From: Guillardia theta CCMP2712
Lineage: Eukaryota > Protista > Cryptophyta
Length of the DNA stretch: 41,650 nucleotides
Direction: 5' to 3'
NCBI RefSeq assembly: GCF_000315625.1
Contig: NW_005434409.1
Location: forward strand, 1-41,650
The notes beneath the pieces are model-generated. The model was not told the DNA's origin. It searched no databases and worked only from the letters and a program-made list of their open reading frames with translations. The first letter of the stretch is position 1, and every line of letters starts with the position of its first letter. Made by a program: the position numbers and the translations under genes. Positions 4,088 to 9,339 of this stretch are shown in pieces.

Positions 4088-5758
4088 ATGGCAAGCCCCG
4101 TCTCGCATGCGCTCGTGTCGACGTACCTGGGGATGAGGTGAGGACGAGGAGGACGAGGAGGACGAGGAGGACGAGGAGGACGAGGAGAGGGAAGGAGGAG
4201 ACACGCAGAGAGAGGAGAGGGTGGAAACCAACAGGAGGGAGAGGAGTGGAGTCAAGGGAAGTCGAAGAAGTCCGGGAGGGATATTAGTACAGGAAGAGAA
4301 GGAGAGGAAATGCGGGAAGAGCAGCGATGGAGGAGACAAACTATCATCGTGTGAGCACGTAGACAAGAATCGCTGTAAGAGTTCATCCATTCTGATCCTG
4401 ACATCGCTGCTGTTTGCCCGTCCATGGCTCCTTGCGGCCCTTAGGAATGGGCTGCATTACGGGGTGAAGATTAGAGCACCCCACGCGCTCATCATGCACC
4501 TCATCTTCAAGGCTCAGTCCCCCCTGAAAGACAACCTCATCTCCATCCTCAAGGTACCGCTACACGTCCGTCCTGCCTCCTCCATCCTGCCTCCTCCTCC
4601 GCTCCTCCCCTCTTCCTAACCCTTCCCTCTCCAGATGAGCTTCGTGCATGCAAGAAACCTCGGGGTGTTCGTCTTCATCTACAAGGGTCTGCTGTCTGCG
4701 GTGCTGCTAGCTCGTGCTTGTTCACTTGCCTCATCGTTCCTCCAGGCTAGGCTGCTCTACATTGCCCTCGGCCTTGGGGTCTCCACACCACCGGGAGCAG
4801 CAGCACGGGGCTGGCATGCTCTGCTGGCAGGATGGTAAGAAGTGAAGTTGTGGTGAAGGAGATCCGTTCCCTTCAACACTTCATCCTCCTCGTCCATCAT
4901 CAACACCACTGTGCTGTTTCCTCCTCCTCTGCCTAACGCCAGTCCCTCCTAGCTCCTACTCGTCCTTTACTGACATTCTTGTGGAGGATCGGAGCACAGT
5001 TCGTGTGGGCAAACTTCTCGTCAGTGAACGAGCAGATTTGCTTGTACCTGCTGAGCAGAGTGAGAAATCGAGGAGGAGGAGAGGAGGGGGAAGTAGGGTG
5101 GGAGGGGAGGGGAGCAGCGGGAGGGCGAAGGGGAGCAGGAGCAGGAGCAGGAGATTCACAGGCGGGCAGGTAATCCTCGGTCTCTTCAAGCTGATGGCAA
5201 AGAGAGGAGTTTCGCCTCTGAACAAGGTCAACTACCAACAAGTCTACCCCTACCTCGCCTCCGCGTACCGTCGAGCTAACAAGTTTGTGCGATGCTGACT
5301 AGCCCGCAGGATCTGGGCGATTGTCATGTGGATCTACGAGGTTGAACCCAAGATGCTGCAGCCTTCCCTTGAAGCCTCCATGAGGTGCAACAACAACAAA
5401 CAACATCGTCATCACCACTACCACCACCACCACCATCAACAACAACAAACAACAACATCGTCACCACCACCACCACCACCACCACCACCATCAACAACAG
5501 CAAAAAACAACATCGTCATCATCATCATCACCACCACCACCACCATCAACAACAACAACAACAACCTTCCTCCTCCCTCCTATTACCACGACCAGCACCT
5601 CTGACGTTGAGCTCAGGTATCTCTACACCGACAGCAACTCCTGGAGCAGGAAGGAGAGGTTCTTCCCCACCCTCGCCTCTGCCGCCATCCTGGGGAGCGT
5701 CTTCTGGATGAAGAGAAAGAGCCTGGCGGACCTCTGGGACCTCAAGAAGAGGGTGTGA
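4088..5758 (+). CDS. PXMP4: Peroxisomal membrane protein 4 (PMP24, Tim17 family); exons 4088-4137, 4445-4553, 4635-4700, 4746-4834, 4987-5059, 5170-5264, 5310-5384, 5617-5758
   Basis: The spliced product contains RNGLHYGVKIRAPHALIM, HARNLGVFVFIYKGL, VNEQICLYLLSRVILGL and IWAIVMWIYE...LQPSLEASMRYLYTDSNSW, all hallmark PXMP4 motifs. All introns are GT-AG and keep frame. Confidence 0.93.
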
Positions 5759-5958
5759 CGAGGCGGGCACGCGAGGAGGCGAGCGAAAGGCGACAAGGTT
5801 AACGCAGACGGAGGGCGGGAGAGCGGAACAAGGGGAGGGGAGGACGAGGCTGCGTGAGAGGAGCGAGGAGCGAAGAGGGGCGGGAGAGGAGGAGGAAGAT
5901 AAGAAGTTGAGGGAGGGGGGGAGGGGGGGGTGGGGCGGTTGGTACTTCAGGAGTTTCG

Positions 5959-8217
5959 TTAAGGAGTTGCGTTGACAAGCACAGAGCGGAAGTACTGAGT
6001 GAACTGCTTCCTGTCAAGGCCCCCCCGCGAGCTGCCAGTAATGTCCTGCAGCAGATGCTCGATGCTCTCGGCGTCGAACCCGAGCCTCTCGAGCCTCAGG
6101 AGCAGCTCCTTGCGGTCCACCACCCCCGAGTTGTCCTCGTCGAAGAACTGAAAGAGCTGCTCCAAGGAGTTTACCAGCTCGTCCCCCTCGTCAGCTGGGA
6201 ACATCATGGCCGTTGCGAACTCCTTGAAGTCGATGTGCCCGTTACGGTTCACGTCCATGAAGGAGGTGAGCTGCTGAAGGGCCCCAGGGCTGACGTGGCA
6301 GCCGAGGTCGTCGGCGATGGTCTTGACCTCGTCGCAGCTGATCATGCCGCTCTTGTCCGTGTCGTGGATCTCAAAGATGGCACGGAGGTCAAGGAGGACG
6401 TCGGGGGACTCCTTGCTGAAGAGCTCCTCCCACTCCATCTCGACGATCTCGGACGTGCGCCGGTGGAAGTGATAGCCCGACTTGATGAGCTGGAGGCGGA
6501 AGATTATCTTGGAGAGGGTGAGGAGGATGGCGTCGAAACGCTTCTTCCTCTGCTGCCGTAGCACCTTCCACACGTCGTCGTTCTGCCGCAGCTTCTCGGT
6601 CGCTGTGTTCCAGTTGTACATGAGGAAGGTCGGGGGAGTGAGCAGGATGGCGGCGAAGGGAGGGAGCATCGCGAGGTACTGGAGAAAGTCGAGCTCCTTG
6701 GGTAGCTGAAGGCTCTCAAAGAAGATGGGCTGGAGGGCGAGAAGCACGATGGAGTTGAAGAGGAGGAGCTTCATGCTCGAGAGGTAGTAGCCCGGCCCGT
6801 TGGCCCCGACGCGTCCGAACAAGATCTCATGGTCGTTGCGGGGGGGAGCGCTGAAGGGAATCTCGAAGAGCGCGGCCCAGTTGACAAAGTTGTTGTCGTA
6901 GACCTCCCGGTTGAGCTCCAAGTAGGGGGGAGGCTGCAGACGGTAGTAGTCGATGCCGTTCTTGGAGACCTTGCGCAGCCCCGGCATGAGCTGGTGGTGG
7001 ATGATGGACATCTTCATGAAGTTCCATAGCGTCCAGACTATGATGGAGGCATGGGAGAGGAGGAAGATGGAGAGGAGGCCGACCTTGTACCCTCCGTCCC
7101 CGAACTCCACCTCTCCGAGGCCCTCCAGCAGAATTACGGCGAGGGCGAGGGGAATCCAGATCCAGGCGAGCTGCTTCGTCTCGATGGTGACGAGCTTCCT
7201 GAGGTTCTTGGAGGCGTTGTTCTCCAGGTAGGAGAAGAACTTGAAGTCTTCGGGGAGGAAGATCCCGTCCCGCTTCGCTTGCACGATGAACCTCTCGCGG
7301 AACCGGAGGAACTCTGCCTTCCTCTCCTCCGAGTCCTTGACCAGCTCGCTCAGGAGGAGGTTCACACTCCAGATCTCCTCCGGGCGCGTCGCCGACAGCC
7401 CTCCATGCATGATCATCTTCTCGAAGACTCTGTCGTGCGACCACTTCATCTCCGGGCGGTCGTTCTTGAGCTTCATCACGTCGTCGGAGATCTTCATGCG
7501 GATCAGGTCGTAGCGGAACGAGAAGTCCCACTCCTGGATCTGCCTGCTGATCCATATCACCAGCATCGTGCAGGCCCCGAAGAAGGCGATGGTCACCGAG
7601 AAGAGGCCGTTATGCAAGGTTTCGAACTCCTCGAACAGGAGCTCGGGCTCCCCGAGGTACTTGTCGCTCAGGTACGCCAGTCAGCTGTCCTCTCCTCCGA
7701 TCTGGAAGGATCCGACCAGGAGGCCGATGAAGCCCAGGGTCGCGAGCTCGGAGAAGATCTTGACGATGACCGGCCGCATGGTGAGCGGGAGCTCCTCCTT
7801 CACGTACTCCTTGAACATGTCGAAGACGTTGGTCAGGAGGAGGATGGCTGAAATAAGGATGAGGCCCCAGCCCGCTGAGGTCCCGATGATCGCCTTGAGG
7901 AAAGGGTTCAGAAACTCGACATGGTGGCTAGCATGCTCGCTGTGAGCCCCCCCCGTTGACGGAAGGGACGAGTGCAAGTTGCCGATAAGCTCGTCCAGTC
8001 CACTGCCCTGCATGCGAGCCGCCTGCCTCCTCCTCCTGGCGAATCCGAGAGCCGGAGGAACTGGACTCCTCAGACGAGGTCGATGAGAAGAAAGTTTGGC
8101 TGCCGCTGGGTGCAGCACGAAGCACTGGCAAGGGTTGAAAGAAAGTAAAAGAATAAGGGTCAACAACAAGAGCTTGTTCGCATCCAGGGATGCTCGGGTT
8201 GTCCAGGGAATGTACAT
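5959..8217 (-). CDS. MLO-family multi-pass membrane protein with C-terminal EF-hands and an N-terminal signal/transit-like leader; one in-frame TGA at 7681-7683
   Basis: MLO-like motifs VKIFSELATLGFIGLL, LHNGLF and EFLRFRERFI...PEDFKFFSYL. EF-hand loops DTDKSGMISCDE, DVNRNGHIDFKE and DEDNSGVVDRKE. ORFs 7681-8217 and 5959-7617 share a frame, separated only by the TGA and 21 sense codons. Confidence 0.78.
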
Positions 8218-9339
8218 GGCAACGGAGGATGAAGACCTCGATGATCAACACGGAAAAATCACAAAGCTAAACTCTTACAACAACAGTACAACAAAAAATT
8301 GGAAGGACAATTCCGATGAAAATTCCGCCCTGCCGCATGTTGGATCAGCCGAATGTCCGACATGATATAGTGAGAACAGGTAACAAACATCAAAGTTGCT
8401 GTGAAGCATTGTTTGATCAATATTCCTCGCACTTTGGTCCTTTATCAGTATGTTATCCTCCTTGATATCAAACCTCTCGATCAGGGTAGGCTGTGCCTCC
8501 TGCCTTCAAGTGTTTGCGAGTCGTGTCGCGTCCATTCTTCTGTAAGCTATCAGCTAACTCGCACGTTCTACTTCAGTCTGATCTGACTCAAAGTTCGAGT
8601 CGATCTGGTATTACACCATCTCATCTGCCTTCGTCTCCGCCAGCATACCTTGCCTTCTCGATGCATTTCATCGAGCTACTTCATAGTCTTCGAACCATCC
8701 ACCAACTTTCGGTATCCTTGCTTTCTCGTCAAAGCTACTCCCCTACTCCCCTCCCCTCCCCTCCTCTTCTTCTCGCATCTCCTGTCAAGAAGCGCTGCAT
8801 CGTGCGGTCTCAATTTCCGAACAAATAACATGTGGTTTTAAAAATTGATACTGTAGTACTATTTAAAATAGCTTATATAAAAATTGCACCTACCCCTACC
8901 TACCTATTTACTGGTCTGATGACCCCACCTTCTGAAATCAAACCGAAGCAGTCAAGTTTTGGTTACGTATCGTCGTAAGTCGATGTTAATCTCTGTTAAT
9001 CTTGACAGTACTCGGTGATTCTCTGTGATTTTAGCGATCTCAATTGACATCTACGTGTGATGTTCTGTTAAATGATCAAATACTTTTTAACTTCTGTGAA
9101 CGTAAGAAGAAGTTGCTAGTCCCAACGTCAGCAACGTGTAAAGTAAAAAAAAAATTCCCGGAGGATCTCAGTGACTCGCCGGGCTTAAACCGGTGCTTGA
9201 GGCGGCCGGGCCCGCCACGCCGTGACGGCCGGGCCGGCCTAACCGTACTGACAGTCGGTCCTGCCAGGGGGGCCGTGGCAAGCGGCGGAGGCTGCCAGGG
9301 GCCGGGTGGCCCGGCCGGGCATGAGGCCCGGTGAGAGCG

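What the first reader, a model, noticed from the sequence alone, without database searches (positions are those of the whole stretch)
5959..8217. MLO-EF-hand fusion with a plastid-type bipartite leader
Seen: a hydrophobic signal (LLLLTLILLLSFNPCQC), then F at +1 and a basic, S/A/P-rich transit-like peptide (FVLHPAAAKLSSHRPRLRS...RRRRQAARM), an MLO-like membrane region and at least three canonical EF-hand loops. Established: plant MLOs are calmodulin-regulated, Ca2+-permeable plasma-membrane or endomembrane proteins, and EF-hand-fused MLO-like proteins are known in some algae and protists. Inference: a plastid-localised MLO with a built-in Ca2+ sensor would be an unusual candidate organellar Ca2+ channel.
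Basis: partly seen in the sequence, partly recalled or inferred. Interest (0 to 1): 0.7.

Follow-up and report, generated by a model that had tools for sequence, protein, structure and literature searches.

The report
Plastid-leader MLO-like channel with built-in calmodulin
This alga carries an intron-free gene for a distant relative of the plant MLO calcium channels with its own calmodulin-like calcium sensor and an address tag typical of chloroplast import. That makes its family a candidate for the unidentified calcium channels of such chloroplasts, although this strain's copy is cut by one premature stop codon.

Summary
Relatives have Trp, Phe or Leu at that position, and an environmental relative reads TGG there.

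- **Architecture:** signal peptide, then Phe, then a 37-residue acid-free basic stretch (net +9) ending "RM|Q", as in this genome's light-harvesting proteins. Then seven membrane helices and a calmodulin-like domain with three canonical EF loops.
- **MLO relationship:** Pfam Mlo does not reach its cut-off on this protein (E 0.24). Homology is transitive but strong. A same-genome paralog passes Pfam Mlo (37.3 bits), and the clade holding this gene aligns to the Pfam-positive clade at hhalign E 3.7e-48.
- **Plastid leader:** a 109-protein tree splits cleanly in two. The clade with this gene holds 24 of the 26 leaders of the type "signal peptide plus aromatic residue". The plastid-type leader is therefore a clade trait, not chance.

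MLO–calmodulin fusions were already described (Kusch 2016). A plastid-leader clade of them was not found in the papers searched. Location and channel activity are inferred, not shown. I class it as a new variant of a known kind, interest about 0.6.

The parts
5959..8217 (-). Whole single-exon gene: 752 codons plus the TAA stop, with one internal in-frame TGA
   Evidence: Contigs of runs X2 and X3 lie on 5911..8700 and 6146..8700 without joints, so no intron is seen.
8122..8217 (-). Signal peptide, codons 1-32. The hydrophobic core is LLLLTLILLL. Possible cleavage sites are LLS|F and CQC|F, and both put Phe at +1.
   Evidence: Hydropathy peak of 2.08 at residues 16-34; heuristic cleavage sites.
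8011..8121 (-). Transit-peptide-like stretch, codons 33-69: starts with F, has 9 K+R and 0 D+E, is rich in A/P/S, and ends 'RM|Q'
   Evidence: Composition. The same 'RM|Q' or 'SM|Q' end occurs in LHC leaders of this genome (L018, L023, L026). Against the X9 relative this stretch has 7 listed substitutions and no indel in 204 nt. The upstream non-coding DNA carries indels from 8334 onwards.
7891..8010 (-). Acidic N-terminal tail of the mature protein, codons 70-109; fast-evolving
   Evidence: Net charge -3. 15 of the listed X9 differences fall in 7924..7995, at all three codon positions.
7714..7890 (-). Helices 1 and 2, including the family's most conserved motif SELATLGFIGLLV. This corresponds to the MLO 'ELMLLGFISLLLT' motif of helix 2.
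   Evidence: The weak Pfam Mlo hit maps residues 120-172 to profile positions 18-70. E, L and G of this motif are at least 90% conserved among 77 relatives.
7681..7683 (-). In-frame TGA, codon 179, in the acidic loop between helices 2 and 3
   Evidence: Homologs have W (P0001, P0004), F (P0002) or L (P0003) in this column. X9 has TGG; X2 and X3 keep TGA. No SECIS or other Rfam match nearby.
6619..7605 (-). Helices 3-7 with the large basic loop (AEFLRFRERF motif) and the H-x-x-LFG-x-x-G-x-x-GP motif
   Evidence: The AlphaFold2 model of the 552-aa piece has mean pLDDT 90.8 and pTM 0.89.
6403..6618 (-). Basic amphipathic helix after helix 7 (WKVLRQQRKKRFDAILLTLSKIIFRLQLIK) plus linker, at the position of the plant MLO calmodulin-binding domain
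5962..6402 (-). Calmodulin-like domain: three canonical EF loops at codons 619, 655 and 693, plus one degenerate fourth hand
   Evidence: Pfam EF-hand_7 1.2e-16, EF-hand_6 7.5e-16, EF-hand_1 2.2e-15. Foldseek against calmodulin-peptide complexes gives TM-score by target up to 0.78. Loop sequences.

Best explanation
The locus is a single-exon nuclear gene of a cryptophyte alga. An earlier scan note names it Guillardia theta; the 87 Mb and 669 contigs fit my recollection of the published Guillardia theta assembly. It encodes a seven-helix membrane protein of a deep sister clade of the Pfam-recognised MLO-like proteins.

**Parts, from the N-terminus**
- An ER signal peptide.
- Phe at the first residue after the predicted cleavage site.
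- A basic, acid-free transit-like peptide ending RM|Q.
- An acidic N-terminal tail.
- The seven-helix core.
- A basic helix after helix 7.
- A calmodulin-like domain of four EF-hands, three of them canonical.

**Most likely working (inferred)**
1. The bipartite leader takes the protein through the ER-derived outer membrane and on into the plastid. It is then inserted in the inner envelope or a thylakoid membrane. Its acidic loops face the intermembrane space or lumen, and its basic loops and EF-hand domain face the stroma.
2. Like plant MLOs, it would assemble into an oligomer. The conserved helix-2 motif (E-L-x-x-L-G-F) would line a Ca2+-permeable pore.
3. The built-in calmodulin-like domain, predicted to clasp the post-helix-7 helix in cis, would couple stromal Ca2+ to gating as feedback.

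**State of this copy**
The sequenced strain has a TGA where relatives have Trp. This allele is either a recent null or depends on stop-codon read-through.

**Shown here:** gene structure, domain content, homology, the clade-wide leader pattern, the stop codon and its TGG counterpart.
**Inferred:** location, topology in the plastid, ion conducted, mode of regulation.
For: **Gene structure**
- One frame runs 8217..5959 with a single TGA.
- No joints appear in the contigs of X2 and X3.

**Selection**
- Listed differences to the X9 relative within 7428..7860 and 6505..6691 are at third codon positions in 17 of 18 cases, on both sides of the stop.
- Indels occur only upstream of 8334.

**Homology to MLO**
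- This protein matches the C36 paralog at E 9.4e-17 over residues 72-522.
- That paralog passes Pfam Mlo at 37.3 bits against a cut-off of 24.
- A profile search found 896 relatives at E<=1e-3.
- 22 of 77 long relatives hit Pfam Mlo, and no other membrane family competes.
- 8 of 10 clade-A members hit Mlo, 4 of them over the cut-off.
- Clade B against clade A by hhalign: probability 100%, E 3.7e-48, 417 columns.
- The weak Mlo hits on clade-B members are colinear. Helices 1-2 map to profile 7-71, and loop 2 with helix 4 maps to profile 211-290.

**Leader**
- It has the same parts as three LHC leaders of this genome.
- The tree splits at SH-aLRT 100/100. 24 of 26 signal-peptide-plus-aromatic leaders fall in this gene's clade. 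Fisher p = 3e-9.
- The rule that F at +1 marks plastid import, while periplastid-compartment proteins lack it, is summarised in PMC12136025.
- The two other paralogs examined in this genome lack such a leader.

**Sensor**
- EF-hand Pfam hits.
- The model (pLDDT 90.8) places the calmodulin-like domain around the post-helix-7 helix, as in calmodulin-M13 fusions.

**Topology**
- All four 'outer' segments (the N-terminal tail and three outer loops) are net negative. All inner segments are zero or positive.

**Channel idea**
- Plant MLOs are reported as Ca2+-permeable channels. A preprint models a trimer pore lined by the helix-2 motif M63, L64, G66, S69, T73 (10.64898/2026.05.18.725938).
- The glycine and the flanking LGFI of that motif are kept here.
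Against: - Pfam Mlo does not reach its threshold on this protein or on any clade-B member tested.
- No solved MLO structure exists to compare folds with, and the membrane domain found no match in the structure libraries.
- The leader was judged by simple rules of my own, not by SignalP, ASAFind or HECTAR.
- The signal peptide has an unusually long 15-residue N-region and an atypical C-Q-C cleavage motif.
- An N-out membrane protein would need a signal peptide anyway if it carries a long N-terminal tail. The signal peptide alone therefore says nothing about the plastid.
- Of the MLO6 residues named as pore-lining, M63, L64, S69 and T73 are replaced here by A, T, G and G.
- The premature TGA is seen in three data sets of the organism, so the protein may not be made at all in this strain.
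- RNA evidence is thin. Only 5 raw RNA reads were laid, and it is a guess that X2 and X3 are RNA.
- The taxa of most clade-B relatives are unknown, because they come from metagenomes and transcriptomes.
Confidence: 0.55

Rival explanations
1. Ordinary secretory-pathway MLO-like protein. The signal peptide only serves to push the long N-terminal tail into the ER lumen. The protein ends up in the plasma membrane or an endomembrane like plant MLOs, and the Phe and the basic stretch are incidental.
For: - MLO topology is N-out, so a cleavable signal peptide is natural for a member with a 100-residue N-terminal extension.
- Clade-A relatives often carry signal peptides followed by acidic tails.
- The cleavage region SFNPCQC is unlike the ASA|FAP consensus.
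- No prediction program was available.
Against: - A lumenal or extracellular tail with net charge +9 and no acidic residue over 37 residues is atypical. Clade-A tails are acidic.
- Both candidate cleavage sites put F at +1.
- The stretch ends in the RM|Q junction seen in this genome's LHC leaders.
- 24 of 36 N-complete clade-B rows keep F/W/Y at +1 although their leaders are not alignable, against 2 of 43 in clade A.
Confidence: 0.2
2. Dead gene. The locus is a recently inactivated pseudogene in this strain and has no present function. The two or three other MLO-like genes in the genome cover the need.
For: - The in-frame TGA at codon 179 would truncate the protein after helix 2.
- It is present in X2 and X3 as well as in the assembly.
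- No SECIS element was found.
- The genome does not read TGA as sense. This gene has 14 TGG against 1 TGA and ends in TAA, and most LHC matches have no internal stops.
- Paralogs exist on C177, C36 and C140.
Against: - There is no second lesion. The frame is open for 573 codons after the stop, and there are no indels against the relative.
- Substitutions downstream of the stop are almost all at third codon positions, so any inactivation is very recent.
- The contigs that hold the locus may be transcripts at depth ~30.
- UGA followed by C is a leaky context, and Trp is the usual read-through insertion (my own knowledge, not tested here).
- This rival concerns the state of one allele, not what the gene family does.
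Confidence: 0.4
3. The protein is imported by the bipartite leader but resides in an outer compartment of the complex plastid (the chloroplast-ER membrane, the periplastid membrane or the outer envelope) rather than the inner envelope or thylakoid.
For: - Multi-pass membrane proteins can be arrested at any of the four membranes.
- Targeting rules were worked out mainly on soluble proteins (PMC12136025).
- Flori et al. name the chloroplast ER as one possible Ca2+ store (PMC11663583).
Against: - F at +1 is the mark of passage beyond the periplastid compartment, and periplastid proteins lack it.
- The RM|Q end matches thylakoid-protein leaders.
Confidence: 0.1

Closest known systems
MLO-like proteins fused C-terminally to calmodulin-like (EF-hand) domains, reported in green algae, oomycetes and Apusozoa (Kusch et al. 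2016, PMC4824068)
   Same: - Seven-helix MLO-like core followed by a calmodulin-like domain of up to four EF-hands.
- The same conserved motifs: E-L-x-x-L-G-F, LF-x-x-G-x-x-GP.
- The paralog on C36 and clade A of my tree belong to this kind and pass Pfam Mlo.
   Different: - This gene sits in a separate deep clade (SH-aLRT 100) that Pfam Mlo does not recognise at threshold.
- It carries a bipartite plastid-type leader in place of no leader or a signal peptide with an acidic tail.
- Cryptophytes are not mentioned in that paper.
Land-plant MLO proteins (Pfam PF03094): Ca2+-permeable channels of the plasma membrane and endomembranes, regulated by calmodulin
   Same: - Seven helices with an N-out, C-in charge pattern.
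- The helix-2 motif with its conserved glycine.
- A large basic second inner loop.
- A basic amphipathic helix directly after helix 7, where plant MLOs bind calmodulin.
   Different: - Sequence similarity is below Pfam's cut-off (E 0.24).
- Calmodulin is built in rather than recruited.
- The four extracellular cysteines of plant MLOs were not looked for here.
- The predicted destination is a plastid membrane.
- Channel activity is untested.
Known plastid Ca2+ transport proteins of land plants (BICAT1/2, cMCU, GLR3.4/3.5)
   Same: The proposed role is the same: moving Ca2+ across a plastid membrane and shaping stromal Ca2+ signals.
   Different: - They are unrelated in sequence and fold.
- According to Flori et al. 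2024, MCU is missing from diatoms and GLRs from Phaeodactylum (PMC11663583). That leaves the entry and release routes of complex plastids open.
Phatr3_J43171, the 'ion channel with EF-hand motif' in the diatom plastid transporter atlas (Liu et al. 2022, PMC9546453)
   Same: A predicted plastid-targeted ion channel of a complex-plastid alga with EF-hands.
   Different: - Its sequence shows two TxGYGD/TIGFGD potassium-channel filters. My reading from those filter motifs is a two-pore K+ channel type, not MLO-like.
- None of the paper's held supplementary files, which include the atlas protein sequences, contains the GLGFIG or LGFIGL motif of this family.

Membership tests
Pfam Mlo (PF03094) / MLO superfamily | Match to the Pfam Mlo profile at or above the gathering score (24 bits) | tested here: not met
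   - First piece: 10.2 bits, E 0.24, residues 120-172 on profile 18-70. Second piece: no hit at E<=1.
- The genome-wide scan with PF03094 hit C36 and C140 but not this locus.
Pfam Mlo (PF03094) / MLO superfamily | Demonstrable homology to proteins that do pass the Mlo profile | tested here: met
   - Against the C36 paralog: E 9.4e-17, 26% identity over residues 72-522. C36 scores 37.3 bits on Mlo.
- hhalign of clade B against clade A: probability 100%, E 3.7e-48.
- 8 of 10 clade-A members hit Mlo.
Pfam Mlo (PF03094) / MLO superfamily | Seven transmembrane helices, N-terminus outside, C-terminus inside | tested here: met
   - Seven hydropathy peaks after the leader.
- Outer segments have net charges -3, -7, -2 and -2. 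Inner segments have 0, +2, +1 and +4.
- This is prediction only.
Pfam Mlo (PF03094) / MLO superfamily | Conserved helix-2 motif with the kink glycine (plant ELMLLGFISLLLT) | tested here: met
   - This protein has SELATLGFIGLLVG.
- E, L and G are at least 90% conserved in 77 relatives.
- The role of G66 comes from a preprint model.
- The flanking pore residues M63, L64, S69 and T73 are not kept.
Pfam Mlo (PF03094) / MLO superfamily | MLO membrane fold by structure comparison | not testable with these tools
   - No MLO chain is in the PDB copy.
- The structure searches were dominated by the EF-hand domain.
- AlphaFold DB was not available.
Pfam Mlo (PF03094) / MLO superfamily | Ca2+-permeable channel activity | not testable with these tools
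   Needs electrophysiology or flux assays.
MLO-calmodulin-like fusion proteins (Kusch 2016) | Calmodulin-like EF-hand domain fused C-terminally to the MLO-like core | tested here: met
   - Three canonical loops plus one degenerate hand at codons 606-752.
- Calmodulin matches by fold.
Nuclear-encoded plastid proteins of cryptophytes (bipartite leader) | N-terminal ER signal peptide | tested here: inconclusive
   - Hydrophobic core LLLLTLILLL with small residues at -1 and -3 of two possible sites.
- No SignalP-type program was available.
Nuclear-encoded plastid proteins of cryptophytes (bipartite leader) | Aromatic residue (F, also W/Y/L) at +1 of the transit peptide | tested here: met
   - F27 and F33 follow the two candidate cleavage sites.
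- The rule comes from PMC12136025.
- It depends on the cleavage site, which is predicted.
Nuclear-encoded plastid proteins of cryptophytes (bipartite leader) | Transit peptide that is basic, acid-poor and hydroxylated or Ala-rich, and resembles those of known plastid proteins of the same genome | tested here: met
   - Residues 33-69 have 9 K+R, 0 D+E, 7 A, 5 P and 3 S.
- The stretch ends RM|Q, like the LHC leaders L018, L023 and L026.
Nuclear-encoded plastid proteins of cryptophytes (bipartite leader) | Experimental localisation in the plastid | not testable with these tools
   Needs GFP fusion, immunolocalisation or organelle proteomics.

The most novel reading that the evidence does not exclude
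The clade holding this gene is a family of MLO-type Ca2+ channels that was recruited to the plastid in algae with complex red-type plastids (cryptophytes, probably diatoms and others). These proteins would be the so-far unidentified route by which Ca2+ enters or is released into the stroma. They would be self-regulated by built-in EF-hands, placed either as a C-terminal calmodulin-like domain or as an EF-hand pair in the second inner loop.
Probability: 0.3. Interest if true: 0.85.

Novelty: new variant of a known kind. Interest (0 to 1): 0.62.

Why it matters
- **MLO biology.** MLO proteins are still called plant-specific, and are studied as plasma-membrane and endomembrane channels. A whole sister clade that carries chloroplast-import leaders would move the family into an organelle.
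- **An open question.** It would supply concrete candidates. Diatom chloroplasts show autonomous stromal Ca2+ signals, yet diatoms lack the MCU complex and Phaeodactylum also lacks GLRs, both of which serve plant plastids (Flori et al. 2024, PMC11663583).
- **A natural experiment on regulation.** In plants, calmodulin is recruited to the helix after helix 7. Here it is fused and is predicted to clasp that helix in cis. In a subclade, an EF-hand pair sits in the inner loop instead.
- **A natural knockout, possibly.** The premature stop in the sequenced strain, against TGG in a wild relative, may provide one.

Tried and rejected
- **Intron to remove the TGA:** no GT..AG pair of a length divisible by three spans it, and no joints appear in the laid contigs. 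Rejected.
- **Assembly error:** the TGA is also in X2 and X3. Rejected, although these may be the same culture strain.
- **Variant genetic code (TGA = Trp):** this gene has 14 TGG against 1 TGA. Conserved genes show no consistent in-frame TGA. The single TGA inside the PsbO match lies in an intron, and most LHC matches have no stops. Rejected.
- **Selenocysteine:** no SECIS or other Rfam hit, and relatives have W, F or L in that column. Rejected.
- **Word-based protein searches:** they gave only 3-4 relatives. The exhaustive profile search was needed.
- **Structure searches with the 552-aa model:** PDB by Foldseek, PDB by VIA-align wide, and the ESM Atlas all returned only EF-hand proteins. 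They say nothing about the membrane fold.
- **Solved MLO structure:** the profile search of PDB sequences found none.
- **Organisms of the relatives:** cluster look-up and contig look-ups gave no names.
- **Phatr3_J43171 as a diatom member of this family:** by its filter motifs it looks like a two-pore K+ channel. Rejected.
- **Raw RNA reads (X19):** only 5 reads were laid, which is too few to define transcript ends or to check the TGA.
- the full-length protein could not be handed to the fold or search tools, because they take no read-through of a stop by reference. The pieces were used apart, and X stood at the stop inside scripts only. No trimer prediction was made, because three copies exceed the size limit.
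Full report
**1. What is at 5959..8217**

On the minus strand there are two long ORFs: 8217..7681 (178 aa) and 7617..5959 (552 aa). Reading the DNA between them shows they are in the same frame. They are separated by one TGA (7683..7681), followed by 21 further sense codons. Translated as one frame, the gene has 752 codons, one internal stop at codon 179 and a TAA terminator.

The first-stage reader quoted the N-terminus and the EF loops correctly but did not mention the stop.

No GT..AG pair of suitable length spans the stop. Contigs of two public runs of the same organism lie on 5911..8700 and 6146..8700 without any joint. The gene is therefore intron-free as far as can be seen.

The 87.1 Mb and 669 contigs reported fit my recollection of the published assembly. 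I did not test the identification further.

**2. The stop codon**

Homologs align through the stop without a gap. The local sequence here is ...IGGEDS*LAYLSDKYLGEPELLFEEFETLH... In the stop's column, P0001 and P0004 have W, P0002 has F and P0003 has L.

- Runs X2 and X3 keep the TGA.
- A freshwater-metagenome relative (X9) shows T>C at 7681 on the + strand. By my count it differs at 67 letters, plus 13 gap letters, over the 1232 bases of 7428..8659. The change at 7681 turns TGA into TGG, which encodes Trp.
- Listed X9 differences in 7428..7860 and 6505..6691 fall on third codon positions in 17 of 18 cases, on both sides of the stop.
- Indels appear only upstream of 8334.

The frame has therefore been under purifying selection as one unit. 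The TGA is a recent change in this lineage or strain.

Alternatives considered:
- A general reassignment of TGA is unlikely. This gene has 14 TGG against 1 TGA. Other genes show no consistent in-frame TGA. The one in the PsbO match lies in an intron, and most LHC matches have no stops.
- No SECIS element was found.

The allele in this assembly is either a recent null or needs read-through. Which of the two applies cannot be decided here.

**3. Domain content**

Pfam finds strong EF-hand matches in residues 410-505 of the second piece (EF-hand_7 at 1.2e-16). It finds only a sub-threshold Mlo match on the first piece: E 0.24, with residues 120-172 on profile positions 18-70.

Three loops are canonical: DTDKSGMISCDE, DVNRNGHIDFKE and DEDNSGVVDRKE. 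A fourth is degenerate.

Hydropathy gives a signal-peptide core and seven further helices. The segments predicted to face outward are all net negative. Those predicted to face inward are neutral or positive. This is the N-out, C-in pattern of MLO proteins.

**4. Is it an MLO relative?**

Directly by Pfam, no. Indirectly, yes.

- The genome holds paralogs on C177 (32% identity, E 1.8e-55) and C36 (26%, E 9.4e-17 over residues 72-522).
- A scan of the genome with PF03094 hits the C36 gene at 37.3 bits (cut-off 24), and also a further locus on C140.
- C36 encodes an 889-aa protein with the same layout and a full calmodulin-like domain.
- A profile of the membrane cores (A1) searched against 1.84 billion representatives found 896 proteins at E<=1e-3 and 421 at E<=1e-10.
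- Of 77 long hits, 50 carry EF-hands and 22 match Pfam Mlo (best 7.2e-12). No other membrane family appears.

A maximum-likelihood tree of 109 cores splits into two clades, each with SH-aLRT 100.

| | Clade A | Clade B |
|---|---|---|
| Rows | 54 | 55 |
| Holds | C36 paralog | this gene |
| Pfam Mlo, 10 members scanned | 8 hit, 4 over the cut-off | 3 weak hits, E 0.03-0.15 |

The weak clade-B hits are colinear with the profile. Profile against profile, clade B and clade A align over 417 columns with probability 100% and E 3.7e-48.

I conclude that the gene belongs to a deep sister clade of the Pfam-recognised MLO-like proteins.

Fold membership could not be tested. No MLO chain is in the PDB copy, and the structure searches returned only EF-hand proteins.

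**5. The leader**

Residues 1-32 have a hydrophobic core (LLLLTLILLL). There are two possible cleavage sites, LLS|F and CQC|F, and both put Phe at +1. Residues 33-69 have 9 K+R, no D or E, and many A, P and S.

I extracted leaders of light-harvesting proteins from this genome that lie in one exon:

| Locus | Leader |
|---|---|
| L018 | ...ASAVS\|FSPSS...LALRM\|QS |
| L023 | ...ASASA\|FAPASS...CSLRM\|QSS |
| L026 | ...ASASA\|FMPTT...GPSM\|QD |

Several other LHC exons begin at the same M-Q junction. This gene's stretch ends ...QAARM|QGSG, and acidic residues begin directly after it.

The published rule is that F (or W, Y, L) at +1 marks import into the plastid proper. Periplastid-compartment proteins lack it (PMC12136025).

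The X9 relative supports the leader being coding sequence. There are 7 listed substitutions and no indel in codons 1-68. Upstream there are indels, and about twice the substitution density if the listing is complete, which I cannot verify. The following N-tail (codons 75-98) is the fastest-evolving part of the gene.

**6. The leader is a clade trait**

Many relatives begin with a signal peptide, then F, then an acid-poor stretch. Examples are P0010 ...TTTA|FTPA, P0031 ...CAAA|FQPA, P0029 ...GAGA|FVVHP and P0062 ...AHA|FVPA.

I classified the N-termini by a simple rule, then corrected nine rows by eye: six rule misses moved into the class, three moved out (named). On the tree, 24 of the 26 leaders of the type 'signal peptide plus aromatic residue' fall in clade B.

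| | Clade B | Clade A |
|---|---|---|
| Signal peptide plus aromatic, among N-complete rows with an extension | 24 of 36 | 2 of 43 |

Fisher's exact test gives p = 3e-9.

Clade-A leaders are mostly signal peptides followed by acidic tails, or absent. Relatedness means these are not independent events. But the leaders are not alignable with each other and still keep the aromatic residue, which is what selection on a targeting signal would give.

The two other paralogs examined in this genome lack such a leader. The C140 locus was not examined.

**7. The sensor**

The AlphaFold2 model of the 552-aa piece is confident: mean pLDDT 90.8, pTM 0.89.

- By Foldseek, the EF-hand part resembles calmodulin in its compact, peptide-bound form, with TM-score by target up to 0.78.
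- That range includes the basic amphipathic helix that follows helix 7 (WKVLRQQRKKRFDAILLTLSKIIFRLQLIK).

In plant MLOs, calmodulin binds at exactly this position. The model therefore predicts a calmodulin-like domain that clasps the calmodulin-binding-site equivalent in cis.

Across the family:
- Clade A has C-terminal EF loops in 42 of 54 rows.
- Clade B has them in 11 of 55 rows.
- In 15 of 55 clade-B rows, EF loops, mostly a pair, sit instead inside the second inner loop.

**8. How it probably works**

Established elsewhere:
- Plant MLOs are reported as Ca2+-permeable channels regulated through a calmodulin-binding domain.
- A 2026 preprint models a trimer whose pore is lined by the helix-2 motif, with G66 forming a kink (10.64898/2026.05.18.725938).

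Shown here:
- That motif is the best-conserved element of the whole family. E, L and G are at least 90% conserved.
- It reads ELATLGFIGLLVG in this protein. The glycine is kept. The residues aligned with M63, L64, S69 and T73 differ.

Inferred:
- The protein is imported into the plastid and inserted in the inner envelope or a thylakoid membrane.
- Its acidic loops face the intermembrane space or lumen. The EF-hand domain faces the stroma.
- It conducts Ca2+ toward the stroma under feedback from stromal Ca2+.

[quoted passage not shown] It also fits the absence of MCU, and in Phaeodactylum of GLRs (PMC11663583).

**9. What is known and what is new**

Fusions of MLO-like proteins with calmodulin-like domains were described in green algae, oomycetes and Apusozoa (PMC4824068). 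The fusion as such is not new.

- I found no paper in the held library that links MLO-like proteins to plastids of diatoms or cryptophytes.
- The held supplementary files of the diatom plastid transporter atlas, which include its protein sequences, contain no sequence with this family's motif. Its 'EF-hand ion channel' J43171 looks by its filter motifs like a two-pore K+ channel.
- The new element is a sister clade of MLO-like proteins in which plastid-type bipartite leaders are the rule. This gene is a cryptophyte member that also carries the C-terminal calmodulin-like domain. P0001, P0014 and P0024 share the combination.

**10. Limits**

- No signal-peptide or plastid-targeting program was available.
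- The organisms behind most relatives are unknown.
- Evidence of expression is weak.
- The tree is a quick search with several long branches.
- The full-length protein could not be folded or searched as one chain because of the stop.

**Verdict:** I class it as a new variant of a known kind, interest 0.62.

Noticed in passing
window 5326-5711: Just downstream of the gene's 3' end lies low-complexity DNA. Its ORFs read as runs of His, Gln, Thr, Pro and Asn in several frames. It looks like microsatellite-type repeats rather than a gene.
   Followed up: no
L018, L023, L026 and other LHC loci of G000: Light-harvesting-protein leaders of this genome end at a recurrent 'RM|Q' or 'SM|Q' junction just before the mature protein. 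Many LHC second exons start at that M-Q. This may be a usable mark of the stromal processing site in this alga.
   Followed up: partly
clade B relatives, e.g. P0028, P0029, P0030, P0033, P0035, P0047: A large subclade with ASAFAP-like leaders has no C-terminal calmodulin-like domain. Instead it has a pair of EF-hand loops 24 residues apart inside the inner loop between helices 3 and 4. This is a second, independent way of building a Ca2+ sensor into the MLO-like core.
   Followed up: partly
G000:C140:53654-54247 (L010, L011): A further locus in the same genome matches Pfam Mlo (27.6 bits when the pieces in one frame are summed). It was not among the hits of the protein search with this gene, so it may be a fourth, more canonical MLO-like gene.
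   Followed up: no
G000:C90:242802-243590 (L012): The PsbO gene of this genome shows one in-frame TGA within the Pfam match. Inspection shows two exons separated by a short in-frame intron, not a recoded codon.
   Followed up: yes
window 7045-7078: A 34-base GAG/GAA-rich stretch inside the gene also matches unrelated, much deeper contigs in runs X2 and X3 (depth up to 442). This is probably shared low-complexity sequence in highly expressed transcripts.
   Followed up: no
window 8218-8700: The contigs of X2 and X3 run at least 480 bases beyond the start codon, through a stretch with many upstream ATGs. Either the 5' UTR is long and rich in uORFs, or these contigs are genomic DNA rather than RNA.
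   Followed up: no
L042/L043 and L044 (environmental contigs with P0039 and P0001): The relatives P0039 and P0001 are also called as single uninterrupted genes on eukaryote-like metagenome contigs. P0039 lies next to a P-type cation ATPase gene.
   Followed up: no
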